A stretch of DNA of 64,000 nt from Vitrella brassicaformis CCMP3155 (Eukaryota; Protista; Chromerida): NCBI GenBank assembly GCA_001179505.1, contig CDMY01000212.1, positions 102,587 through 166,586 on the forward strand, in the 5' to 3' direction. The notes beneath the pieces were generated by a model. That model saw only the letters and a list, made by a program, of their open reading frames with translations. It was not told the DNA's origin and did no database searches. Every line of letters begins with the position of its first letter. The stretch's first letter is position 1. Made by a program: the position numbers and the translations under genes. Shown one piece after another: positions 35,869-58,661 of the stretch.

Positions 35869-36168
35869 NNNNNNNNNNNNNNNNNNNNNNNNNNNNNNNN
35901 NNNNNNNNNNNNNNNNNNNNNNNNNNNNNNNNNNNNNNNNNNNNNNNNNNNNNNNNNNNNNNNNNNNNNNNNNNNNNNNNNNNNNNNNNNNNNNNNNNNN
36001 NNNNNNNNNNNNNNNNNNNNNNNNNNNNNNNNNNNNNNNNNNNNNNNNNNNNNNNNNNNNNNNNNNNNNNNNNNNNNNNNNNNNNNNNNNNNNNNNNNNN
36101 NNNNNNNNNNNNNNNNNNNNNNNNNNNNNNNNNNNNNNNNNNNNNNNNNNNNNNNNNNNNNNNNNNNN
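35869..36168. other. Assembly gap (300 N) flanked by poly-G
   Basis: Exactly 300 Ns with G-runs on both sides. Confidence 0.98.
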
Positions 36169-37461
36169 GGGGGGGGTGAGGGTGGGGGCTGGGGGAACGA
36201 AACGAACACGAACACACACAGCCACAAAAAGGTCATTCATGTGTGTTTGTTGATTGGGGGGGTGTGGTGGTGGCTGGCTGGCTGGCTGGCTACTCATCCA
36301 TCTCTCTCTCTCACTGGTACTCGTGAGCAACAACTTTCTACAACAGAGACAGACACCGATAAAGGACCCGCGCGCCAATCTTGAGGGACAACGAGGGAGG
36401 GAGAGCGGGACGATCCCTAGCAAAGGTAGACAGACAGACAGACGGACGGACAGACAGAGAGGTTGCATATTCCACAGACGACAGACAGAGCGTTAAGAAG
36501 CGTTAGGACACAGATATGAACGATGCTATGATGCAGACAGAATATCACACAAAGCATAATATTATCCATACGCACTGATGATCAGTCAGTCGAGTGAGTG
36601 AGTGAGTGAGTGAGTGGGGGTGGATCGACGACACGGCCGACAACAGTCAGTACTGACACACACGGGTTCTAGAAGGTGCAAGATGCAGGCAAGTCGTGCA
36701 GTGGGCGCATCGCATCGCCCGAGAGGTTTGAAAGCGTGTCAGGCCGCCGTACACATGGCTCCCCTCTCTCACACGCACACGCACATACACATGCACACGC
36801 ACCCTACTACCCTTGACATCGCTCCACAGCACACCACATCACACCACACCACACCATCGTCAGTCAGTTCAAAAGGTTCAAACAACAGCCTTATGGATAC
36901 AATTCATGTCCCTATGTGTCGGGAAAACTCTGCCCTGGTGGGCGGGGGAGTGACTGAGTGAGTGAGTCAGTCGCGGGCAGGAAAGATACATACATCGGGA
37001 CGCACAACAACACAAGAGCACAAGCGGAGAAAAATACTAGATGAGTGTGTGTGTGTGTGGGTATAGAAACAAACAAACAGACAGACAGAGACGTACACAT
37101 GAAGGAAGGTGGGCAGGCAGGCAGGTAAGTGTAAGTGTCTCTCGGGGGGCTGGGTGTGGGTGGTGTGTGGTGTCTGTCTAGCTAGACGGAAAAACGGTTC
37201 GCAGGTTCTTTCCTCCCTCCCTGGCTCCCTCCCTGCGTCATATCAGGTTACTTACCTTTCCCGCCACGTTCAGGTATATTCATCCCCATCTATTGATGCC
37301 ATCCATCCACGCGTCTGTTCCATTCGTCTCTCTCTCTCTCTCTCTCTCAGCCTCCACAGTCAAGTCAACAACAGGCAGACTCAGACACGGCCACAGTCAG
37401 CAAGCCAGTGGGGCAATGAGTCGATCGGTTGGTCGCATCCCACATCCCCCAACCATCCCAT

Positions 37462-40400
37462 TCACCCGGCCACCTCGGCAACCACAGAGTCAAAAACCTC
37501 ATCAGCGCCGTCTCGCGGACCTGACACATACACACCACACATACACACTTCACACATGCATCCCTCCCTCCCTCAATCTCTCTCTCTCTCTCTCTCCTCT
37601 TCTCTCTCCTCGGCTCAGCTCACCTTTGAGGTAGAGGTTGACATCCGAGAACATCTTGATGGGCGGCTTGGTCGGGGCCTCGGCCTCCGTGTCGTCGATG
37701 ACCTTGAACTGCGCGTCGAAGAAGTGTCGCTCGTCATCGTTGTAGCCGTCGAGGTCGCTGGGCCGTCGGGCGGTGGTGGCGGGGGTGATGGGATCCTCTT
37801 CGAGCAGCTCGAAGTTGGGCGAGTTGGGGCACCAAAAGAGGTTGTTGGACGTCACGCCCAGACCTGCACACAGGCGGATGGGGGGAGGGACGGGGGGAGG
37901 GATGGGGGGGTGGGTGAAGCAAGCCCCGCATGGCATGATGACATTCCCCTGACCGACCGTTGAGAATGTGCTTGAACTGGTTGGAGCAGTGCTTCCAGTA
38001 CTGGGCGTCCTCGTACCTGCAGCCATCAACGCACTCACACACACGCAATCAGAGAGACCTGCAGGAGCTTTGTGAAAGCGTCCGTACATTCTGTCTGGGT
38101 CCATGTCGTTGTTGAGGTGAATGACCTCTGGCAGGTCAGCGAACTCCGACCCCGCCTGCTGCGACATGAGCATCAGCTTCATCGGCTTGCCCTGACGCTT
38201 CTCGCGAAGCTTCGACAGCAAATCCTCGATCTCGCCGCGGGTCGCCTCGCCCGTGCGCACAAACAGCACCTGCAACACACACATTTTGGTGGCGTGGCAT
38301 ATGTGTGTGTGTGTTTGGGGGGGGGAAAGTCACCTCGTCGGCTCTCTGCACGGTGTAGTGGAATCTGTTGGCCCTCTGTGAGTATCGTTTCTTCATGCGT
38401 TCGAAGACGGGCCAGATATTCTCGACGGGGTCGTCGCCCTCCTCCACCTCGTGCGCATACGACAGGCCGTGCCACTTGTTGTGGAACACTCGACCCTACA
38501 CACACACACACACACGGGAGTGTGGGCAAGGAAACGAACGGGTGTCTGTGCGCGGAGACGTGTACCAGGTCGTGGTCGTAGTAGAGCATTTCGGGGTTCC
38601 ACATGTCAGTGAAGTCGCTGGCGATCATGTCGGACACATCGCAGGTGAACGAGGTGCGCGTGAGGTCGAAGGGGTAGCAGGGGCCGTCGTACTCCACCTT
38701 GTGCAGCAACATACGAGCCGTGCAACGCGCGCCGAGCGGCACGATCTGAGACACACACACACGCACACACGTGGGGTTGTTGCAAAACCGGTGTGTGTGT
38801 GTGTGCGTGTGGATGGATTGATGGATGGATGGATGGACTGGCACTCACCCCAACTCGTGTGTAGTCGCTCAGCCTTCCTGCGTGTCGGTACAGCACGGCA
38901 CTCTTGGGCGCGGCCTTGACGCTGAAATGGATGGCCACACACAGAGAGACGATGCAGCCATCATGTCTGTTGCTTGTCTTTGCCAGCCACCCACCTACCG
39001 TGAGAGAAGTCCCGACTTGCCGATGAAGAGAGTGTTGAAGTCGCCTGTGGGGTCGAGTGAGTTGATGTAGGCGCCCGTCCGCAGACCCTTGAGCGACGCC
39101 GACAGGTCCACCCACATCGGCTGACATATCGACAGACAGACACATCGGGATGTCTGTCTGTCTGTCTGTCTGTCCGTGTGCCTGCCCCGTCACAACATTA
39201 ACAGACGTACGTGCACGTTGTATTCTGCGTCGGTGTTGTTGACGATCCGCAGAGAGGGCGGCGCTGACGACTGGCCGTCATCATCCTCCGCCTCGGTGAG
39301 TATGCCGATGTTGCCGTCGTAGAACAGCACCTGGCACACATGAGGGGAGAAGAAGTGGAAGGCCGCTATGTAGTCCACCACACTCGCCGGCGGAACGTCA
39401 AAGGACGTCTCGATCACACCGCCCTCTCCGAGAGAGAAAAAGGCGAAGGGCTTGGTGCTCTGCGCCTTCTTGCCGTTGCCCTTGCCGTTGCTGAGGGCGT
39501 CGGCAGCAGCAGCGGCAGCAGTGGCAGTAGGGACCTGGCAGAACTGAGTGCCGGGGTCGTGCCTCGGTGTGTCGTCGCCCGCTGGGTTGAAGATGTAGAT
39601 GCCTGGCGTGATGGGCGAGGGGCTGGCCGACTGCATCGCCTGCAGCCATCCCATCCCACGACACACACAGGGAGGATTGCGATTGTTGTCATGCGAGGAG
39701 TGGGTGTGGGTACCTAGGTACCTGTGTGAAGCCATTTTGCAGCGCGGGCCAGCTGTTGCTGACGCTGTAGCTGTGGTCGGTCTTGTTGACGAATTTGATC
39801 TTGTGGGTGCCGCCCTTGCTCCGCGCCCACACGTCGAAGCCCTTGCCGTCGGTGAAGACCAAATGGGCGTGGGGGAAGGGGTCGCCGTCATGCGTCGGGG
39901 AGTCGGGCTGCACATGGCGTTACATTGCGTTGCAGGCAGGTACACATCACACCCACACACACACAAAAAGAAACTCTCTCTCTCTCTCTCTGTGAGAGTG
40001 TGTGTGTGTGTGTCACCTCACTTACCCACCTGCATCATTGAGTGTGACAGCTGTTTCTCCAGCCGTCTGTTGCCGGCAGTCCCTCCCTCCACCACCACCG
40101 TCTCCGTGTGGAAGAGGCTCAAGTCGATGCTCTCAAACATCAGCCGGTGGCCCTTGCTGTTGGGGTGCGCCGGGTCGAAGCTCACCCCATCAAGCCACTT
40201 GCCCGTCCCGCCTTTGGCCTCGAGATTGGTCAGGAAGTCGAGCACGGGCACGCCCCAGCCCTTCATCTTGGCCTCGGTCTGCTTGAGCAGCGTGTAGTGG
40301 TCCTTTGTGTAGTCGCCGTTGGGGTACACGCCGCCGAGAACGGGCCGCGCATTGATGTCCTTGATGAGCTGGATAAGGTGCTGAATGCCCGACTCGAACC

Positions 40401-41518
40401 GCTGCTTGGCGGCGTGGCGCTGGTGGGCCGGACAATGAGCCAGACCCTCGTTGCCCAAGGACAGACCGACAATCACTGCAAGCATCCCATCCGGGAGGGG
40501 AGGGAGGAGCCGTGTGGGCGTGTGGTGTGGGTGGGCAATGGTGGGGGTGGTTGGGTGGGTGTGCGTACCAACTTCAGGTTTGTGTTTGGGGACGACTTGG
40601 TGGAACCGCTCGATAGTGCGGCCGACGTTGGCCCCGCTCTCACTCTCGTTGATGAGCTGGTGGCCGTACTGCTTCGACAGATGCTCACCTGTGCCGACAC
40701 GACACCAACACACACATCCACATGCACAGTGCTTCGCGTGCTTAAGGGATCGTTTCCCCCACCAAGCAGCGTGGCCCATCCGCGCATCTTCCATGAGTTG
40801 TAGCCGTACGCAACCGAACTGTACACACACACACACACACACACACACAGAGCTCAGACGAACGAATCTCGCTGTATCCCCCAAAGCCGCCTGAAGGGAT
40901 CCACGCGGCGCCCACCTGCCGATGACGACAATCTTGAGGCCACCCCGTGTGGGCGGGGGAAATGTTGGGGGCGCAGGTACTGTCTGTGGGGGTTTGAGGA
41001 CAAAGCCAAAGGGGTGGGGCTGGATGTACCCAAAACCACCGTCGTCAATGATGATGTCTGCACACATACACACACACATAAGGGAGGGCACACCGAGCTC
41101 AGCTCGGCTGCAGTAAGTCCCGCGCGCTGACCTTGGTCTTCTACTGGTACCCATCTGTTCTCGGTGCAGCCGTCCCCCTCCCAGACGGTCTCGCCGTACT
41201 CGGTGAACCTCACGTACTTGTACTGCACCTTGCCACCCACCGCCACATGCTTCGTCACCGGCACCAGCTTGGGTGTCCACCACAGGGGGTACTGCCCGCT
41301 GCCCGTCGTAAGCTTGACGCACTTCGTCACGTCCCAGCTGCCCAGCTCTGCTCGTACACACACACACACACAGATGAGAGTCATTGCTGGCGTGTGTTTG
41401 TGTTTGTGTGTTTGTGTGTGTGTTTGTGCCTTTTCTGTTTGTGCGCACCAGGTATAGAGCCGACGATGCCGATGCTGTCGCCGAAGCTGGTCTCGGCCCG
41501 CACCTGGAACTTGTACAT
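37462..41518 (-). CDS. CBM20 starch-binding + SGNH/GDSL esterase + DUF1796-like putative cysteine peptidase fusion (about 15 introns)
   Basis: CBM20: MYKFQVRAETSFGDSIGIVGSIPELGSWD...YPLWW...YKYV. SGNH blocks: VIG|SSV, GAN, GLSLGNE, DPAHP. C-terminal IVPLGARC...YPFDLTRT...AHEVE...RYSQRANRF...VLFVR...NLFWCP. Exons join in frame; stop at 37462-37464. Confidence 0.85.
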
Positions 41519-41695
41519 CGCCTCCAGAAAGTCAGCGGGGCGAGGGGCTCGGAGGCCGTGGGGCGAGTCGGGCTGGGCGGGCGAAGGGATACCAACGATA
41601 GATCAGCGAATTGCAAACGTCATCGCTTTCCGCTTCCAGTACACCTGCCGCGCGAGCTTAGCTCGCAGGGGAAAAGAGCTGACGAGGTCAAGGGG

Positions 41696-44600
41696 ATGGA
41701 GGTGGAGGCGGACACACAGGGGGAGGCAGCCCCACCAGATGACAAGAAAGAACAACAGGGGGCGGCCGACAACGAGCCCGGCAACGGTGCTGCAGCTGCA
41801 CCACAGCCGGATGCTGCGGAGGACCAGAAGGCCACAGAGGGGACGGCGGTCGAGGACAAAGACAAGGGAGAGGGGGACAAGCAAGACGCGACGACGGATG
41901 AGCCGGCACAAGAAGACAAACCAGCGAAAGACGAGGATGCAGACAAGCCCCAAGGGCAGGAACAAGCAGAACCCCCGGCCGAGCCAGCTGCCGAGGAACA
42001 CAAGGAAGAAGCCCCTCCCAGAGAGGCGGCGGAGACAGATGAGCCCCAGGCAGCCGATGAGAAGCGACAAGGCGGCGGAGAGAGGGAGGGGGAGAGGGAG
42101 AGGGAGGTGGAGGGGGAGGGGGAGGGGGAGGGAGCGGGACAAGTGCCAGATGAGAAGGTCGAAGAGGCGGCGGCTGAAGGTGGGGAGGGGCCGCAGCCGG
42201 AGGGAGAAGGTGAAAGTGAAGGTGGGCCGCCGCTTGTGACTGAGACGGCGAATCACTTGAGAAATGACATTGAGCGGACTGCACAGACAACAACATCGGC
42301 AGTCCTGACGCTGCAGCAGGCTATCGTGAGCAATGCCATTCCGTATCTGCCAAAGACGTTCGTTCGCGTGTCCATCGATTTCCTTCTCGTGTCGTGTAGG
42401 GCCGCCTTGGTGTGTCTGCTGATCTGGTGGACGATCCAGCAAAGAAGGAGGAGATCAAACAGGCGCAGCAGTAAGCCAACCAACAAACGTGAGATGGATG
42501 GCACACCACAGACACTTCTCTCTTGCCGGTGTTTGTTTGTTTGTCATGTGTGTAAGGTCGCTGCAGGAGGCCGCTGATGAGCTGGAGCGCCTCCGCGACT
42601 CACTCCAGCAGCCAGACAGCGCCAAAGCGGCCGTGGTAAGCGACACGCTGAGCATTCATGTGGGCCGTGCACAGTTCAGGTGTGTGTGTGTGTGTGTGTG
42701 GATGTGTGGGTATATCAATCAGAGTGCGTCAGAGGAGGAGGACAAGGGCCCGACGCCGATGCCTCCCGTCAAGGACCTCCTCGACAACCTGGACAGGAAG
42801 CAGGTAGGGCGCGATTGCGACACAAGACGGGGGAAATCACGCCTCGCCTCGCCAGGCTCATTTGCTGTCTGTGTGCCTGCAGGTGCCTTCAGTGGTGGGG
42901 TCGTCATGCAAGGACGCAACGGGAGAGGAGCCACAAGACGCAAGTCAGTCGGTGATCGGGAGAATCTGTCCATTCTACCACCTTACTGTCTGTTTGTCTG
43001 TGCGCTGTGCAGGCGAGCTGAGTTTCGACGAGCGGGCGATGCAGGAGGTCAGTGAGAGGTCCACGATATTCCACACGAGAAAGGATCTGGTGTGTGTTTG
43101 CGTGTCTTACCAGGACATGGACAGCCTGCGTCGAGTGCGTCGGCAGCTGGAGTGTGACGCAGAGGGGCGCGACCTCATGGTCAGTCAGCACATGGCGGGC
43201 AGGTAGCGTGTATGTCAAACCATACATCTATTGCCTGCTGCTGCAGGAGGGTGTTGAGGCGCCAGTGTATGAGGCGGACTATGTTGACGACGACCTATCG
43301 GAGCTGAAACGAGTCAGGAGACAAATAAGGTCGGTCCGTCATTGTCATCCCTCTTAGTCGTCAATCCATCCATCCATCCATCCATCCATCTGTTTTGTCC
43401 ATGCAGGTATCTGTTTGGCGGTCTGCTGCAGTCCCTGCCCGCACAAAACGCAGAGTGAGTAGGGCCCTATAAGGGGCTGCGGATGACGCGCTGTGTTCCC
43501 TGCTCACGTGTGAGTGTTTGTCAGGACTTTGGCGGAGCAGTTGAACCTGCCCAAGTTCCCACCAGACCCCAGCGATTTGTCCAAGGTAACTAACACAAAA
43601 GGATGAATCGATTCGATCGACGATGTCTCTTGCCCATCCATCCATCCATCCACCTATACGCATCATTCGTGTGAAAATGGTCAGAGTGCGACGCCTGTGG
43701 TGAGCGGCAAGGAGGATGACCGGCCACTCGTGCCGCACAGAGACGACTACCGTAAGTCAGCCGAGTGGTCACCTTCGTCTGGCAAATGGACAATTTATTG
43801 CCTGGGTACCTTCTGTCACCACCTGCAGGCCCTGCCCGCCCACAGGGCAGGCATCGCGAGTCGCGCAGCACATTGGACGGCGGGGTGGTGAGAGGGCGGG
43901 GCTATGGAGAAGAGAGGGAGGGCATGCTGGATGAGGAGACGCAACCAGAGGACGACAGCACCAGCGGAGGCAGACGCAGACCCTCACATAAAGTGTGGCA
44001 GCTCGGTCCACAACATACAGACGCGCAGTCATTCGACGCTGGGTCCTTTCTGTGTTTGTTTGTGTCAGGGTGTGCGTCGCGGTGAGGAGGCGAGGCCACC
44101 TGGCGGTGATTGGGCATCTGAGGTCATCAAGTTGAGTCTGGACCCCGACAACCAGTGGGAGTGGGGCAGAAACAGGTCCATGCAGCCATACGGTCAGTCA
44201 GTCAGTATGGGCAGCAGCCTGCTGCTCACGGACATCACACGCAGTTCCATCATCCATATGCATTCACGCGCATGACATGACAGGTCGCGGTGACCCCTCT
44301 CAGTTGTTGAAGGAGTTGGATTTGTCGTATGGCGTCAAGGACCGACAGCGCGCCTCATGGGAGACCCCACACACATCCAAGGCGGGTGGACCGCCAGCCG
44401 ACCTGCCCCCGCCACGCGCAAAAAGACCTTCTGCGTACTCGGGTACAGATGAATAAGATCCGTTCAACTCAACAGGCAGCCCAGCCAGACACATATGTAT
44501 ATGTTCATCCATCTAGCCATTCGTTTGATTGATGTGCCTGCCTTTCTGTGGTTGTGTGTGTAGGTGAGAGCCGCGGAGAGAGTGAGGAGGTGCCGCCTCC

Positions 44601-52500: not shown

Positions 52501-55500
52501 GGAGGGAGGGAGGGAGGGGTCGAAGGTTCTCTTGAGATCCATCTCTTTATCTGTCTCTTTGTCCTTCTGTGCTGTGTGTGTTTGATAAACAAAGGACGGG
52601 TCAGCCGGTGCACGTGGAGAACCTTCTAGAGGACCCCCGCATCTTTGCCGACTCCGACCTGCCCTCATCCCTCGACCCGGAGGAACTCATGGACCTCCTC
52701 TACGTGCCCCTTTTCTCTTCTGTCGCCGCCAATGACCCCAACGACCAACAACCACAGCCACCGCAGCACCAGCACCAGCAGCATCAGGAGCATGTAGTGG
52801 GTGTGTTGCGGCTGGCCGCCACTGTGCCGGGGGTGTTTGACGACGTGTACGTCAACTCTGTGACCACGAGTGTGCGGCTGCTGCAGCACATATGCGACAG
52901 GGGCCAGAGGCTGGAGCAGCTCGCCGCAATGTTCGAACACAGAGAGGTCCGTGGTGGGTCGGTGGATGCGCATCGCTCTCTCTCTGTCTTGCTGGGCGGC
53001 GGATGGTTTCTGGGGTTTCTGTCGTGCAGGTGTCTAGCGCCCTGACCTTCCGCGAGTTGTTCCGTGTGGTGACGAGCAAGGCCAAGTCGATCCTTCGGTG
53101 CAGCCGCACCTACCTTTTGCTGGCCGATGAGTCCCTGGGTAGGGAGGAGAGGAGACACAGCCCCGTGTGTGTGGCTGAGACATGCATGTCTCTCTGTCTC
53201 TGCCTGTGCTGCATTCATCGCACGTGTGTAGGTGTGTTGTGGTCGTTGGTCGGTGCGCACCACGAGTCGAGGATTGAGGTGACGCTCGACAGCAAATCCA
53301 TCGAGGGGCAGGTGGGCCGGGGGGGGGGGGGGGGGNNNNNNNNNNNNNNNNNNNNNNNNNNNNNNNNNNNNNNNNNNNNNNNNNNNNNNNNNNNNNNNNN
53401 NNNNNNNNNNNNNNNNNNNNNNNNNNNNNNNNNNNNNNNNNNNNNNNNNNNNNNNNNNNNNNNNNNNNNNNNNNNNNNNNNNNNNNNNNNNNNNNNNNNN
53501 NNNNNNNNNNNNNNNNNNNNNNNNNNNNNNNNNNNNNNNNNNNNNNNNNNNNNNNNNNNNNNNNNNNNNNNNNNNNNNNNNNNNNNNNNNNNNNNNNNNN
53601 NNNNNNNNNNNNNNNNNNNNNNNNNNNNNNNNNNNTGGGGGGGGGGGGGGGGGGGGGGGGGGGGGGCTGCGTGGATGGCCTTCTCTCTCCACGACCTGTG
53701 TCTGTGTGTGTGTGTGTATGTGTGTTCGTGTGCGTGTGTCCGTTTCCACACACACAATACACTACAACACAATACAGGTGTTCTTGCTGGGTGCCACGGT
53801 GAAGGATTCAGTCCAGCAGAAGGCGTGCCTCGACCGAGTGCTCGGATACAAGCCATCCAACGTCATGGTACGCCCGTAGACATTCAACACACACACACAC
53901 ATCCCGCCGCCCCAACACACACACTCAAGGGCAGGGGGGACACACTCACTTGTCCCTGCTCTGCTTGTGCCACCTGTCAGGCGGTGCCTCTGAAGTTCCC
54001 TGGCGGCCGTGCCATCCACCACCCCCCCTCCCCCTCCTCCCCAGCAACCGACAAGGACGCACATGAGAGGCCGTCATCCAGCAGGGTGGCTCATGAAGCC
54101 AGGCGCGGCCCATCACGGGAAACAGCAGGCGCAACAAAGACAACCACAAAGACCCGCGCCAAAGACGGCTGGCCGACCTCCATCGGACACTCCCGTGTGC
54201 TGGGGGTGCTCCTGGCCGTCGACAAGGTGGGAGCCCAGGCCTTCGACCAGCTGGACGAGCTGCACCTGGCCTCCCTCGCCACACCGACTGCATGCGTCTC
54301 GGCCCACCTGTTGGAGCAGCAGCGCGCCAAGCAGGAGACAAGACAGCTGCACTTGGTGGTCACTATTATCGAGACACTGATGCGGTGTCAGCGGCTGCAG
54401 CAGTTCCTGTTGGAGGGCGGGGCGCTGCTGGCGAGGCTGGCTGGGTGTTGGGCTGCGGATGTGCTGTTGCTGAATGACACGTGCACCCATCTGCTGGGCG
54501 TGCGGCAGGGGACGTGCGCGAACTTGACGCTGGACGGGCTCAAGAGGCTGGAGAGACAACAGAGACAGCACGAGGGTGGTGGCGGTGGTGGTAATGTTGG
54601 TGGGCAGGAAGGGGACAGGGCCATCATCCAAGTGCTCACGGTGCGATCGACAGATTCACTAACATACATCTGCGCACATCACACATCACACATTTGATTA
54701 TCAATCCCGAATCTCGTGCGTGAAAGTACGTGGCTTCCTTCGTCTGCCTGCAGGTGTCCGACCACCCCTATCTCGCAGAAACGCTCAACGGCGCCGTGAC
54801 TTTCCCCCAGAACACCTACGTGCAGGGCCCATTATCCCCCTCCTCCCCCGGCGGCACCCACGCACACCCCCGGACACGCAGCCAATCCAGACGGTCGGCG
54901 GCGAGGGTGGGATCGGTCTTCAAGAGAAGGCGCGCCAGCTCTCGGGCGTCATCTGTCGGTGGCCCACAGGGTGAAGGCACGTCGTCCACAGCCCCCTCGC
55001 TGTGTGTGAGCTGCTGCGTGCCCGTCAAGGGGACGGGAGGGCGGACTGTGGGGGTGATCCGGCTTATGGATGGGCAGCCGAGGCAGAGGCCTGAGAGACT
55101 ACCCGTGGCAACCATCCAGAGACTCGCTGTCACGGTGAGTGAGTGACGTGACGGGGGCACACGAAATGCATTCATTCCATGGGCGTGTGTGTCTCCATGC
55201 CGTGCAGCTGGCTGAGCTCATCTCATGGCTGCGGCGCCTCTCGTCGCCCGTTGGCTCGTACATCAACCTCATGGCCACCATCCCACAGCAGCACCAACAA
55301 GGGTCGGCTGCACCACCTAGTATGCAGCCGGCCATACCATCCCTGGCCGACAGCCAGCAGCAGCAGCGCAGGGGCCCGCTGCTGGTAGAGGCGCCGCGCA
55401 TTAATCGCTTGATCGTCGTTGCGAGGGCTGACGGACGGCTGGAACGGTGTGTGGGTTGACTGACACTCAAAGTGCCTTTGTATGCTGTGTGTGGTGTGGT

Positions 55501-56140: not shown

Positions 56141-58661
56141 TATTGCATTAGGTGTTCATCATGTTGACTGACATCCGGCCATTGGCAGGGTCGGTGGTGG
56201 TGCCCCTGCCAATCGGCACATCATCACCTGACAGCCGGCAGGCCAAAGTCGCCGCACCGAGAGGCGAACGAAAGTAAGAAGCCTACCAATCCCCCCCCCC
56301 CCCCCCCNNNNNNNNNNNNNNNNNNNNNNNNNNNNNNNNNNNNNNNNNNNNNNNNNNNNNNNNNNNNNNNNNNNNNNNNNNNNNNNNNNNNNNNNNNNNN
56401 NNNNNNNNNNNNNNNNNNNNNNNNNNNNNNNNNNNNNNNNNNNNNNNNNNNNNNNNNNNNNNNNNNNNNNNNNNNNNNNNNNNNNNNNNNNNNNNNNNNN
56501 NNNNNNNNNNNNNNNNNNNNNNNNNNNNNNNNNNNNNNNNNNNNNNNNNNNNNNNNNNNNNNNNNNNNNNNNNNNNNNNNNNNNNNNNNNNNNNNNNNNN
56601 NNNNNNNCCCCCCCCCCAAGTCAAATGCCTGTCTGATGTCTGGATGAACCAGGTCAATCGGGGCGCTCCCCCTCCTACCCGCATCAAGCAGCGCAGACGA
56701 CGAAAAAGTCGCAGAGAACCTCTTTCTCCTCACCTGTTGGCCGCAGAAGGTCCTCATCGAGCCCGCACCTCACGGATCCTGGGGCAGGACCGACATTGCT
56801 GGTGGCTCCCGGCTGCGGGAGGTGGGCAGCGGCGGGCTGGGGGAGGACTTTGCCTTTGGCAGTGTGCTGATGAAGGTGCTGGAGGGGATTGTGCGGGCGG
56901 GGGGGGAGGTGTATGCTGTGGAGCAGAAAGCCGTGTATGGGCTCTTTTGGAACCACATCGACTGCCTCACGGCCGGGTGTCTCATCGACCAGGTGTGGAT
57001 GGATGGATGGATGGACATAGACTGTCTGTCTCAGTCTCTTGTGTCTCATCTCGTTGCGTCATGTGTGGGTTGCAATGCAGCAAGTGGGTCCGCAGGTGTT
57101 GGAGATGGGGTATGACCTCCTGGTCTGCGCTATGCACGTCCGGCTGCTGCACCCTGTGGTCGCTGCCCCCTCACCATTCCTGGTCGGTCGGGCGGTCGGT
57201 CAACCATCCAGCCCCACACACACCACCACAGACCCAACTGTTTCTCTCCCTCCCTGTCACTCACTCGCTCTTTGTCTCTCCGTCTCTCTGCCCCTCTTGT
57301 CTTGTGTTTGATATATGCAGCTGAGTCGGTTGAGGCCCGCAGCAGCCAGGGACCATCTGCGGCAGTCTGTGCGTGCACTGACCAGCCAGACGGGCGCCGA
57401 TCGCCCCGCCAGCCGTCTGGCCAAGCTGACCGAGATGATCACGTCGGCACAGCAGCGGCGGGGCAGCCAGGTGTCTGAGGTGGGCACTCATGACCACCAG
57501 CCCCCATCCGGCGGCGACCCCTCCCCCGCCCCCACACCACGCGCAGACAACAGCACGCACACGCATCCAGCCGCTGCTGCTGGTGCTGCTGGTGCTGGCA
57601 CCAACGGCCCATCTTTGTCAGTAGGAGAGGTGCAGGTGCCTTTGGTGATCCCGACGGCCGTGCACACCGCGGTCAAGGACTTCGCCAGCCGAGCCTTGCT
57701 CTACCCCTTCCGCGGCTTCTTCGTTCTGGCCTTCCCCGCCGACCTGGATCACGACTTTGTCACGTCTCCCATTGAGAATGTGCACATGGTCGACACATCG
57801 GCGGGATGCTGGGAGGGAGACAAGGCAGAGGAGGGGGAAGGCGGTGGGGGGGCAGCGCCCGTCAGGCCCATGACCGTCATGAATGTGCACGGCAGGTGCG
57901 CACACACGCGAGCTCATCGACTAAGTGCAGACGGGACAAGGGAAATGCGGTGTGTGCGAGTTGTGTGTGTGTGCAGGGTGGGTGATTTGCCCCCGTCGAT
58001 GGTGGAGCGGCTGGGTCGCTACCACGTGGCCTACCAGGCATACCTCCACGGCGGCAACCTCCTCAACACCATACAGGTAGCGTAGCAGCGACCCGAAAAC
58101 AACAACACGATCCCTTGCCTCTGTCTGTCTGTCTGTCTGTGTGTCTGTCTGCAGGAGTTGGAGGCTCTGATAGAGGACGGCATCGACGACGACGTCTTCA
58201 CCCTGCTGCTGGTGCCGCAGCTGACCCTCCTGCTCAAGCGATCCCTCTACCTCTTCATGGCCGGGCCGCCATCCGCCTGTGGCCACCCTGCACAAGCCGC
58301 CACAGGTGCCGAAGCCGATGGGTCATGGGATGAAGGCTCGGAAGCGACGCCCACGCCGCGCACATCGAGACAGCAAAGGGCCCACGCGAGGAGCGAGGAG
58401 AGAGAGGCCGGCGGGCCGCAGGCAATGGAGCGGTGGAATGGTGTGTGGGAGGGTGCCGAGCCGACGATCGGGCAGCTGCGCAGCATGGCCAGCAGCACCC
58501 ACAGCAGCAGCGGCTGGGGCAGTCGGCATAAGGGCGCCTCCGCCTGGCAGGTGTCGACAGAAGGATGGGAGCCCTGGGTGCGGGAGCTTTTGCAGACGAC
58601 ACTGCTCATCCTGCAGACCGTCGAGACGGCCGCCGATCACAACAACATGCTGCTCATGTAG
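49530..58661 (+). CDS. Very large multi-GAF-domain protein with a C-terminal degenerate phosphodiesterase-like region
   Basis: Repeated GAF signatures: ESALFLPIF...VIGVMAALN...FS; LLYVPL...VVGVLRL...FDD; GYKPSNVMAVPL...LGVLLAVDK..AFDQLDE; CCVPVK...VGVIRL. The C-terminal region has PDE-like helices in the expected order. Many introns and two gaps lie inside. Confidence 0.7.
53336..53635. other. Assembly gap (300 N) in an intron, flanked by poly-G
   Basis: Exactly 300 Ns; the flanking exons (SIEGQ|VFLLGAT) join in frame. Confidence 0.98.
56308..56607. other. Assembly gap (300 N) flanked by poly-C
   Basis: Exactly 300 Ns with C-runs on both sides. Confidence 0.98.

What the first reader, a model, noticed from the sequence alone, without database searches (positions are those of the whole stretch)
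37462..41518. Cyanobacterial-type CBM20-SGNH esterase-DUF1796 fusion domesticated as an intron-rich gene with no targeting peptide
The spliced protein is starch-binding CBM20, then an SGNH hydrolase with a complete Ser...Gly...Asn...Asp-x-x-His set (GSSV, GAN, GNE, DPAH), then a linker, then a DUF1796-like region keeping the putative nucleophile (PLGARC...PFD). From memory, the same order and motifs (MY.FQ..A.T start, IDDG.FGY.QP.PFG, DPAHPN, YDGP..PFDLTRT, NLFWCP end) characterise a family of uncharacterised cyanobacterial proteins. About 15 spliceosomal introns show real nuclear integration. An in-frame stop lies 26 codons upstream of the ATG, so there is no plastid-targeting leader and the protein is probably cytosolic, where this lineage stores starch/amylopectin. 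This is a candidate undescribed granule-bound deacylase/peptidase of storage-glucan metabolism, acquired by endosymbiotic or lateral transfer.
Basis: partly seen in the sequence, partly recalled or inferred. Interest (0 to 1): 0.82.

Follow-up and report, generated by a model that had tools for sequence, protein, structure and literature searches.

The report
Cyanobacterial-type starch-binding esterase gene in Vitrella
This is a real, transcribed, 15-intron nuclear gene of the alga Vitrella for a starch-binding enzyme of cyanobacterial type. An October 2026 preprint already reports the family as needed for starch build-up in the sister alga Chromera, so it is interesting but no longer new.

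Summary
On the minus strand, 41518-37462, lie 16 exons and 15 GT..AG introns encoding 913 aa. Spliced contigs from several public runs carry all domains on one transcript. The product equals the annotated 914-aa Vitrella brassicaformis CCMP3155 protein except for one Ala at a NAGNAG acceptor.

Pfam scores CBM_20, Lipase_GDSL_2 and DUF1796 above their cut-offs. The SGNH Ser/Gly/Asn/Asp/His set is intact. The best full-length relatives are about 750-aa cyanobacterial proteins with the same domain order (43-47% identity over 91% of the query; 275 GTDB species). Chromera, red algae, Cyanophora and a dinoflagellate-like clade also have the family.

The protein starts at the CBM20 domain, and the transcript has only about 120 nt of leader, so there is no targeting peptide.

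It is not undescribed. bioRxiv 10.64898/2026.09.25.754361 reports this "CBM20-containing SGNH hydrolase" from Chromera starchless mutants, with unresolved origin.

New here:
- The DUF1796 Cys/His/Asp columns are invariant in 46/46 sequences, while one dinoflagellate-like paralogue clade has lost the SGNH catalytic residues.
- The predicted DUF1796 fold is flavodoxin/SGNH-like, not papain-like.
- An acyl-CoA-synthetase-like gene neighbours the cyanobacterial genes in 52/80 loci.

The parts
41519..41648 (-). 5' untranslated leader, colinear with the genome. The in-frame TGA lies at 41605-41603.
   Evidence: Contig arithmetic gives 121 nt (X6) and 130 nt (X7) ahead of the ATG. Depth in bin 41488-41674 fits this. 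Stop position.
41449..41518 (-). Exon 1: ATG and start of CBM20 (MYKFQVRAET...).
41132..41347 (-). Exon 2: main part of CBM20. Intron 1 has a NAGNAG acceptor.
   Evidence: Pfam CBM_20 3.3e-10 on the exon alone. Site-1 residues W29, K68, W80 and E81 align with A. niger glucoamylase W543, K578, W590 and E591. Joint 41057/41132.
40916..41057 (-). Exon 3: conserved linker (IDDGGFGY..QP.PFG) and start of SGNH block I (VVIGS).
40763..40818 (-). Exon 4: SGNH block I, nucleophile Ser (GSSV; Ser145 in 914-aa numbering).
   Evidence: joint 40688/40763
40569..40688 (-). Exon 5: SGNH block II (SGAN).
   Evidence: joint 40475/40569
40030..40475 (-). Exon 6: SGNH blocks III (GNE) and V (DPAH).
   Evidence: Lipase_GDSL 3e-5 on the exon alone. 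100% identical to P0001 residues 204-351.
39722..39907 (-). Exon 7: start of the beta-rich middle region.
   Evidence: AF2 model of residues 338-836, pLDDT 85
39211..39639 (-). Exon 8: middle region, with a low-confidence Ala-rich loop and beta strands.
   Evidence: joints 39120/39211 and 39639/39722
38999..39120 (-). Exon 9: beta-sandwich resembling domain C of GH13 amylases.
   Evidence: VIA Z 8-9 over 76-90 residues, model residues about 178-275
38849..38921 (-). Exon 10: end of the beta-sandwich and linker into DUF1796.
38566..38745 (-). Exon 11: start of DUF1796, with invariant G-x-R-C (Cys629) and DGP..PFDL.
   Evidence: DUF1796 8.5e-5 on the exon alone. Cys invariant in 46/46 sequences.
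38334..38495 (-). Exon 12: DUF1796, invariant His686, His696 and Glu697 and an Arg-rich helix.
38088..38269 (-). Exon 13: DUF1796, invariant His786 and Asp794.
   Evidence: joint 38269/38334
37958..38016 (-). Exon 14: DUF1796 C-terminal helix.
   Evidence: joint 38016/38088
37624..37863 (-). Exon 15: end of the conserved region (NLFWCP) and start of a tail of about 80 aa that the cyanobacterial proteins lack.
   Evidence: Cyanobacterial matches end at query residue 827-838. Joint 37863/37958.
37462..37520 (-). Exon 16: last 19 codons and the TGA stop (37464-37462).

Best explanation
This is the Vitrella brassicaformis nuclear orthologue of a conserved multidomain protein of cyanobacterial type. 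The domain order is CBM20, SGNH (Ser-Asp-His) hydrolase, a beta-sandwich like domain C of GH13 amylases, then DUF1796.

Shown here:
- The gene is spliced and transcribed as one mRNA and has no targeting leader.
- It keeps the CBM20 site-1 starch-binding residues and all SGNH catalytic residues.
- It keeps a set of Cys/His/Glu/Asp/Arg residues in DUF1796 that are invariant across the family.

Taken from the preprint: loss of the Chromera family member gives a starchless phenotype.

Inferred mechanism:
- The protein sits in the cytosol on the storage alpha-glucan through its CBM20 domain.
- There it acts as a two-site acyl or ester-handling enzyme. The SGNH Ser site removes or transfers an ester group on the glucan or on a granule-bound partner.
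- The DUF1796 domain, with Cys629 at the start of the first helix after strand 1 of a flavodoxin-like fold, is a second catalytic or acyl-carrying site and the most constrained one.
- The gene entered eukaryotes by transfer involving a cyanobacterium. Whether that was endosymbiotic (through the plastid lineage) or lateral is not resolved.
For: Identity and gene model.

Domains above the Pfam cut-offs.

Family:
- The 119 best full-length hits are cyanobacterial or metagenomic proteins of about 750 aa with the same three domains, E about 1e-220 to 1e-232.
- 275 relatives were found in GTDB species genomes. The 80 kept loci are all cyanobacteria where named.
- Eukaryotic members are Chromera Cvel_23550, Porphyridium (two species), Timspurckia and Cyanophora.
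- A further clade includes a transcript contig that starts with the 3' part of the dinoflagellate spliced leader, with one mismatch.

Catalytic columns:
- SGNH G-S-S/G/N/D..H is intact in Vitrella and in 41 of 46 sequences.
- DUF1796 C629, H686, H696, E697, H786 and D794 are invariant in 46/46.

CBM20: site-1 residues align with those of glucoamylase 1ac0.

Nearest solved SGNH: E. coli thioesterase I TesA, 2e-7.

Folds:
- The DUF1796 model has pLDDT 90.5.
- The nearest solved folds are CheY-like domains and SGNH/CE2/CE3 esterases, Z 6-7.
- In the Atlas it matches stand-alone DUF1796 (TM 0.71) and GSCFA (TM 0.61). GSCFA is an SGNH-clan family (PMC9487903).

Cyanobacterial context: an AMP-binding acyl-CoA-synthetase-like gene lies within about 4 kb in 52/80 loci, across at least seven orders.

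Genetics and cytosolic starch: bioRxiv 10.64898/2026.09.25.754361.
Against: - No biochemical activity, substrate or localisation is known for any member.
- No ester substituent on cyanobacterial glycogen or chromerid starch was documented in anything I read.
- The fold matches of DUF1796 are only middling (Z at most 7.2), and profile-profile comparison with the protein's own SGNH domain finds nothing (hhalign probability 0.2%).
- The acyl-CoA-synthetase neighbour lies on either strand at varying distance, so it may reflect synteny rather than function.
- The preprint gives no gene identifier. That Cvel_23550 is the mutated gene is inferred from architecture and taxon range.
- The preprint authors favour a regulatory role.
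Confidence: 0.6

Rival explanations
1. The protein is mainly a non-catalytic regulator or scaffold. CBM20 brings it to the glucan, and the hydrolase-like domains bind ligands or partner enzymes and tune cytosolic starch synthesis to photosynthate supply. The preprint suggests this role.
For: [quoted passage not shown] One dinoflagellate-like clade (P0287, P0289, P0290, P0291, P0293) has lost the SGNH Ser, Asn and His, so SGNH catalysis is dispensable there.
Against: The SGNH catalytic set is kept in 41/46 sequences, from cyanobacteria to red algae. The DUF1796 Cys/His/Asp columns are invariant in 46/46. Both patterns are typical of active sites. The clade with the dead SGNH sits beside a sister clade with an intact SGNH, so it looks like a paralogue.
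Confidence: 0.2
2. The C-terminal domain is a papain-like cysteine peptidase, as the Pfam name says. It processes or degrades granule-associated proteins, and the SGNH domain is an accessory esterase.
For: Pfam names PF08795 'putative papain-like cysteine peptidase'. There is an invariant Cys at the start of a helix and three invariant His.
Against: The AF2 model (pLDDT 90.5) is an alternating alpha/beta domain. Its 50 best VIA matches are CheY-like, SGNH/CE esterase and cobalamin-binding-type domains, with no papain-like chain among them. Foldseek finds nothing at E <= 0.001. The Atlas neighbours include the SGNH-clan family GSCFA.
Confidence: 0.08
3. On origin: chromerids obtained the gene separately and directly from a cyanobacterium. 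They did not share one acquisition with dinoflagellates through a red-algal-type symbiont.
For: In both trees Vitrella, Chromera and P0190 lie next to the cyanobacterial clan, with red algae and the dinoflagellate-like clade further away. Vitrella's highest identity (50%) is to an Oscillatoriaceae protein. Holding chromerids and the dinoflagellate-like clade together costs 18.7 lnL, p-AU 0.030.
Against: The p-value is borderline. I set the groups after seeing the first tree. Support along the backbone is 82-93 SH-aLRT with no bootstrap. Chromera is a long branch. There is no outgroup. Cyanobacteria are one clan, so no specific donor lineage appears. The preprint finds the same tree unresolved.
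Confidence: 0.25

Closest known systems
[quoted passage not shown]
   Same: Same description (CBM20 plus SGNH) and same taxon range: chromerids, dinoflagellates, red algae, glaucophytes, cyanobacteria. The Chromera protein Cvel_23550 (P0014) shares the full architecture and 41% identity with the window's product.
   Different: The preprint text mentions no DUF1796 or peptidase-like domain, no catalytic residues and no gene identifier. The equation with Cvel_23550 is my inference. The Vitrella copy has no mutant data.
Cyanobacterial proteins of about 750 aa that NCBI names 'DUF1796 family putative cysteine peptidase' or 'lipase' (e.g. Nostoc, Oscillatoria, Leptolyngbyaceae, Crocosphaera)
   Same: Same domain order, collinear over residues 1-831, 43-47% identity by BLASTP (45-50% in the alignment).
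   Different: The Vitrella gene has 15 spliceosomal introns, an Ala-rich insertion in the middle region and a C-terminal tail of about 80 aa that cyanobacteria lack. The cyanobacterial genes often sit near an acyl-CoA-synthetase-like gene.
CBM-linked SGNH carbohydrate esterases and O-acyltransferases (CE2 acetyl-xylan esterases, AlgX, OatA/PatB; review PMC9487903)
   Same: A carbohydrate-binding module joined to an SGNH Ser-His(-Asp) domain that adds or removes esters on a polysaccharide. CE2 and CE3 structures are also among the nearest folds to the DUF1796 model.
   Different: Those enzymes act outside the cytoplasm, on cell-wall or secreted polymers, with other CBM families. No CBM20-SGNH acting on alpha-glucan has been characterised. 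The nearest solved SGNH by sequence is TesA, not a CE family member.
E. coli thioesterase I / protease I / lysophospholipase L1 (TesA; PDB 1jrl, 1ivn)
   Same: Best solved-structure match of the SGNH domain (E 2e-7; NCBIfam PRK10528 at 6.7e-10). Same four conserved blocks.
   Different: The score is far below the NCBIfam cut-off (39 against 270 bits). TesA is a single-domain periplasmic enzyme.
Papain-like cysteine peptidases (the label attached to Pfam PF08795)
   Same: A conserved Cys at the start of a helix, plus conserved His and Asp.
   Different: The predicted fold is a flavodoxin/SGNH-like alpha/beta sandwich, with no papain-like structural match.

Membership tests
CBM20 starch-binding module (PF00686) | Profile match above the curated cut-off | tested here: met
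   58.2 bits against 23.3, residues 3-95
CBM20 starch-binding module (PF00686) | Binding-site-1 residues (Trp, Lys, Trp-Glu of glucoamylase W543, K578, W590, E591) | tested here: met
   W29, K68, W80 and E81 align with those positions in 1ac0. They are invariant or at least 90% conserved in the family. The residue roles are from my own knowledge of the glucoamylase domain.
CBM20 starch-binding module (PF00686) | Actual binding of starch or amylopectin | not testable with these tools
   Needs a pull-down or an isotherm.
SGNH/GDSL hydrolase (Pfam clan CL0264) | Profile match above the cut-off | tested here: met
   Lipase_GDSL_2 61.6 bits against 32.9; Lipase_GDSL 47 against 23.6
SGNH/GDSL hydrolase (Pfam clan CL0264) | Block I Ser, block II Gly, block III Asn, block V Asp-x-x-His | tested here: met
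   S145, G181, N211, D303 and H306 are present in Vitrella. They are conserved in 41-44 of 46 family members.
DUF1796 (PF08795) | Profile match above the cut-off | tested here: met
   31.9 bits against 23, residues 622-759, profile positions 3-146 of 166
Papain-like cysteine peptidase (as PF08795 is labelled) | Papain-like fold (helix carrying Cys packed against an antiparallel sheet carrying His) | tested here: not met
   The AF2 model is alternating beta/alpha. The best matches are CheY-like and SGNH/CE esterases at Z 6-7, with no papain-like chain in the top 50. This rests on a prediction only.
Papain-like cysteine peptidase (as PF08795 is labelled) | Conserved Cys and His | tested here: met
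   C629, H686, H696 and H786 are invariant in 46/46. Their spatial arrangement was not measured.
Cyanobacterial CBM20-SGNH-DUF1796 fusion family | Same domain order, collinear full-length similarity | tested here: met
   43-47% identity over 91% of the query, E about 1e-220 to 1e-232. tblastn covers residues 1-831 in 80 cyanobacterial genomes.
Cyanobacterial CBM20-SGNH-DUF1796 fusion family | Eukaryotic copies nested inside cyanobacterial diversity (direction of transfer) | tested here: inconclusive
   The cyanobacteria form one clan (SH-aLRT 99 and 96) and the eukaryotes lie outside it. The tree is unrooted.
Myzozoan starch-pathway CBM20-SGNH gene of the 2026 preprint | Orthology to the Chromera gene whose mutation gives starchless cells | tested here: inconclusive
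   Chromera Cvel_23550 has the same architecture, and chromerid monophyly is not rejected (p-AU 0.16). The preprint text gives no gene identifier.
Spliceosomal nuclear gene | GT..AG introns removed in RNA-derived contigs | tested here: met
   Nine exact joints, plus contig arithmetic and depth for the remaining introns

The most novel reading that the evidence does not exclude
The universally conserved core of this family is the Cys/His DUF1796 domain, which would be an SGNH-like (not papain-like) acyl-enzyme domain. Together with the Ser-type SGNH domain and CBM20 it would form a soluble, cytoplasmic two-site machine. That machine would put an acyl group onto storage alpha-glucan, or take one off. 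In cyanobacteria it would be supplied by the neighbouring acyl-CoA-synthetase-like enzyme. Transient glucan acylation would then be a hidden step needed for starch or glycogen build-up, inherited from cyanobacteria by algae with cytosolic starch.
Probability: 0.12. Interest if true: 0.85.

Novelty: already known. Interest (0 to 1): 0.4.

Why it matters
The family links a starch-binding module to two hydrolase-like domains of unknown activity, and by the preprint's genetics starch build-up in Chromera depends on it. That makes it one of the few starch-pathway components without a known reaction. Its range is cyanobacteria plus algae that store starch in the cytosol, so it also bears on how storage-glucan metabolism was rebuilt after endosymbiosis.

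The Vitrella copy adds a well-supported full-length gene model. This work adds testable detail:
- which residues to mutate (Ser145, Cys629, His786, Asp794);
- a natural paralogue clade with a dead SGNH site but an intact DUF1796 domain;
- a conserved cyanobacterial neighbour that hints at acyl chemistry.

The discovery itself is not new.

Tried and rejected
1. The spliced protein has no reference, so I first searched exon pieces. Pfam found the domains only weakly on pieces and NCBIfam found nothing. The exon-6 search of the representative library returned the annotated full-length protein P0001, which I used from then on.
2. The Atlas feature search with exon 8 gave only weak beta-propeller-like leads below 0.9. 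I dropped it.
3. Looking for stand-alone DUF1796 relatives with the domain alignment returned only fragments of the same family. Whether Cys629 is conserved across all of PF08795 is therefore untested.
4. hhalign of the DUF1796 domain against the protein's own SGNH domain gave probability 0.2%, so there is no sign of an internal duplication.
5. The PDB sequence search with the DUF1796 profile gave only E about 0.2 hits to GT4 glycosyltransferases. I rejected these as insignificant.
6. The AU test on the 48-row tree did not finish. I repeated it on 25 rows.
7. The dinoflagellate spliced leader was found on one of three transcript contigs checked: L001 yes, L083 and L084 no. The absences mean little, because contigs need not reach the 5' end.
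8. Cyanobacterial contamination of the assembly is rejected. The gene has 15 introns removed in RNA-derived contigs and lies between other intron-bearing genes.
Full report
**What is there.**
- The minus strand between 41518 and 37462 carries 16 exons separated by 15 GT..AG introns of 64-122 nt. They give a 2742-nt reading frame of 913 codons.
- The quoted motifs are all present: GSSV, SGAN, GNE, DPAH, PLGARC, PFD, IDDGGFGY, YDGP and NLFWCP.
- The in-frame stop upstream of the ATG is the 29th codon (TGA, 41605-41603), with no Met between it and the ATG.
- A search of the representative library with exon 6 returned a 914-aa protein, 100% identical over that exon. It is the annotated product of Vitrella brassicaformis CCMP3155, which UniRef calls 'CBM20 domain-containing protein'.
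- That protein differs from my model only by one Ala at residue 24, from a NAGNAG acceptor at intron 1. The shorter form has the spacing seen in cyanobacterial relatives.
- Earlier notes of this scan had already called the genome chromerid, Vitrella type. This hit confirms it.

**Transcription and splicing.**
- Contigs of four public runs from three studies lie on the gene in spliced form.
- Exact joints are listed for introns 2, 4, 5, 7, 8, 9, 12, 13 and 14.
- The 3.9-kb contigs X6 record 7 and X7 record 9 run from the 3' UTR to the 5' end. Their record coordinates fit removal of introns 6-11 and 15 to the base.
- Depth in the bins holding introns 1 and 3 matches the exon length alone.
- All domains are therefore on one transcript.
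- The contigs hold only about 121-130 nt ahead of the ATG, and depth there fits a leader colinear with the genome. No upstream coding exon exists.
- The protein starts with CBM20 at residue 3 and has no hydrophobic stretch anywhere; the highest 15-aa hydropathy is 1.26.
- The same holds for Chromera, P0190, several members of the dinoflagellate-like clade and most of the red-algal sequences.
- A cytosolic location is the default reading. It fits the cytosolic starch of chromerids described in the preprint.

**Domains.**
- On the full-length protein Pfam gives CBM_20 (3-95), Lipase_GDSL_2 (141-314) and DUF1796 (622-759), all above their curated cut-offs.
- CBM20 residues W29, K68, W80 and E81 align with the site-1 residues of the Aspergillus glucoamylase starch-binding domain.
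- The nearest solved SGNH enzyme is E. coli thioesterase I.
- An AF2 model of residues 338-836 (pLDDT 85) shows a beta-rich middle region. Its second half resembles the C-terminal beta-sandwich (domain C) of GH13 amylases, CGTases, trehalose synthase and branching enzyme, with Z 8-9 over 76-90 residues.
- A separate model of residues 612-836 (pLDDT 90.5) is an alternating beta/alpha domain. Its nearest solved folds are CheY-like receivers and SGNH/CE2/CE3 esterases at Z 6-7. Foldseek finds nothing significant.
- In the ESM Atlas the same model matches the cyanobacterial family (TM 0.92), stand-alone DUF1796 (TM 0.71) and GSCFA (TM 0.61). GSCFA is listed in the SGNH clan (PMC9487903).
- No papain-like structure appears. 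The Pfam label 'papain-like' is therefore not supported by the prediction, although these Z values are too low to prove an SGNH relationship.
- hhalign sees no sequence link to the protein's own SGNH domain.

**Relatives.**
- The word search with the full protein listed 119 further proteins of 736-923 aa, nearly all about 750 aa. They show 42-47% identity over about 91% of the query and nearly all carry the same three Pfam domains.
- Those that carry names are Nostoc, Calothrix, Tolypothrix, Leptolyngbya, Oscillatoriaceae, Microcoleus, Crocosphaera and other cyanobacteria.
- A scan of one genome per GTDB species found 275 relatives. The 80 kept loci are cyanobacteria wherever a taxon is named.
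- Named eukaryotic members are Chromera velia Cvel_23550, Porphyridium aerugineum, P. purpureum and Timspurckia. Cyanophora paradoxa has a short form with CBM20 and SGNH only.
- A clade of transcript-length contigs and EukProt transcripts also belongs to the family. One of its contigs begins with the 3' part of the dinoflagellate spliced leader, with one mismatch.

**Conservation.** I aligned 46 full-length members.
- The SGNH Ser/Gly/Asn/Asp/His columns are intact in Vitrella and almost all others.
- Five sequences forming one dinoflagellate-like subclade have replaced them (GSS to GDA or GDS, GNE to EL., His to Gln/Asn/Glu).
- The DUF1796 columns C629, H686, H696, E697, H786 and D794, and many arginines, are invariant in all 46.
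- The C-terminal domain is therefore the most constrained part of the protein.

**Phylogeny.**
- Maximum-likelihood trees (LG+C20+F+G4 PMSF, quick search) with 48 and 25 rows put all cyanobacteria in one clan (SH-aLRT 99 and 96). All eukaryotes lie outside it.
- Vitrella, Chromera and the metatranscriptome protein P0190 lie nearest the cyanobacteria. Red algae and the dinoflagellate-like clade are further away.
- Chromerid monophyly is not rejected (p-AU 0.16).
- A chromerid plus dinoflagellate clan is borderline rejected (p-AU 0.030). I chose those groups after seeing the tree, and there is no outgroup.
- The data fit a transfer between cyanobacteria and plastid-bearing eukaryotes. They do not show nesting inside cyanobacteria, a donor, or the route into chromerids.

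**Prior art.**
- A full-text search for CBM20 plus SGNH found bioRxiv 10.64898/2026.09.25.754361, posted 2 Oct 2026.
- The preprint finds it in chromerids and photosynthetic dinoflagellates and absent from heterotrophic derivatives. Its phylogeny cannot decide between glaucophyte, red-algal and cyanobacterial origin.
- The taxon range I recovered independently is the same.
- The preprint text does not mention DUF1796, a peptidase, catalytic residues or gene identifiers.

**Cyanobacterial context.**
- In 52 of 80 cyanobacterial loci an AMP-binding acyl-CoA-synthetase-like gene of about 495 aa lies within about 4 kb. It sits on either strand, in Nostocales, Oscillatoriales, Aerosakkonematales, Chroococcales, Pseudanabaenales, Coleofasciculales and Gomontiellales. 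It scores below cut-off against every named NCBIfam subfamily; the best is malonyl-CoA synthase.
- No other neighbour is conserved.
- This is a lead towards acyl chemistry, not proof.

**Verdict.**
- It is overtaken on novelty, and unsupported on the papain-like peptidase reading and on nesting within cyanobacteria.
- The most likely mechanism is a cytosolic, glucan-docked enzyme with a Ser-type SGNH site and a second Cys/His site in DUF1796, acting on an ester or thioester substrate. This is inferred and untested.

Noticed in passing
window 41348-41350 (intron 1 acceptor, minus strand): NAGNAG acceptor (..GAGCAG|AG..). The public annotation uses the upstream AG and gains one Ala (914 aa). The downstream AG gives the 913-aa form, whose spacing matches all cyanobacterial relatives.
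   Followed up: partly
window 37521-41448, the 15 introns: Twelve of the 15 short introns carry (GT)n, (CA)n, (GA)n or (CAGA)n microsatellites. These repeats made the read tool skip several joints.
   Followed up: partly
window 41681-42600, plus strand: A head-to-head neighbour gene encodes an acidic, Lys/Glu-rich low-complexity protein. Its transcript contigs start at 41681-41683 in three runs and splice out introns 42326-42399 and 42471-42556 (GT..AG). The contig ends of the two divergent genes are only about 35-60 bp apart, which suggests a compact bidirectional promoter.
   Followed up: no
window 35869-36168, 53336-53635, 56308-56607: Three assembly gaps of exactly 300 N each.
   Followed up: no
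window 37000-37461 and beyond: The spliced transcript contigs run at least 460 nt past the stop inside the laid stretch and about 570 nt further. This is either a 3' UTR of about 1 kb or read-through into the next gene.
   Followed up: no
P0287, P0289, P0290, P0291, P0293 (metatranscriptome contigs; L083): A dinoflagellate-like paralogue clade has lost the SGNH Ser, Asn and His but keeps every invariant DUF1796 residue and CBM20. It is a natural pointer that the C-terminal domain carries the indispensable function.
   Followed up: partly
P0015 (Cyanophora paradoxa), P0004, P0013, P0023: Short forms of about 340-355 aa have only CBM20 and SGNH. P0004 lies on a 4.9-kb contig and so is probably complete. 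The two N-terminal domains may also work as a stand-alone unit.
   Followed up: partly
L003-L082, e.g. L003:11358-12845: An AMP-binding acyl-CoA-synthetase-like gene lies near the cyanobacterial family gene in 52/80 loci across several orders, with variable strand and distance.
   Followed up: partly
P0002, P0010, P0016: Giant proteins of 3088-3534 aa carry two or three tandem SGNH domains, 39-40% identical to exon 6 by phmmer (31-34% by BLASTP over the whole SGNH domain). One lies on a 5.1-Mb contig. I did not examine them further.
   Followed up: no
P0190 / L002 (JGI 3300016818): A 923-aa intronless transcript contig is the closest eukaryotic-looking relative of the Vitrella protein (48% identity in the alignment). 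It has no leader, and its organism is unknown.
   Followed up: partly
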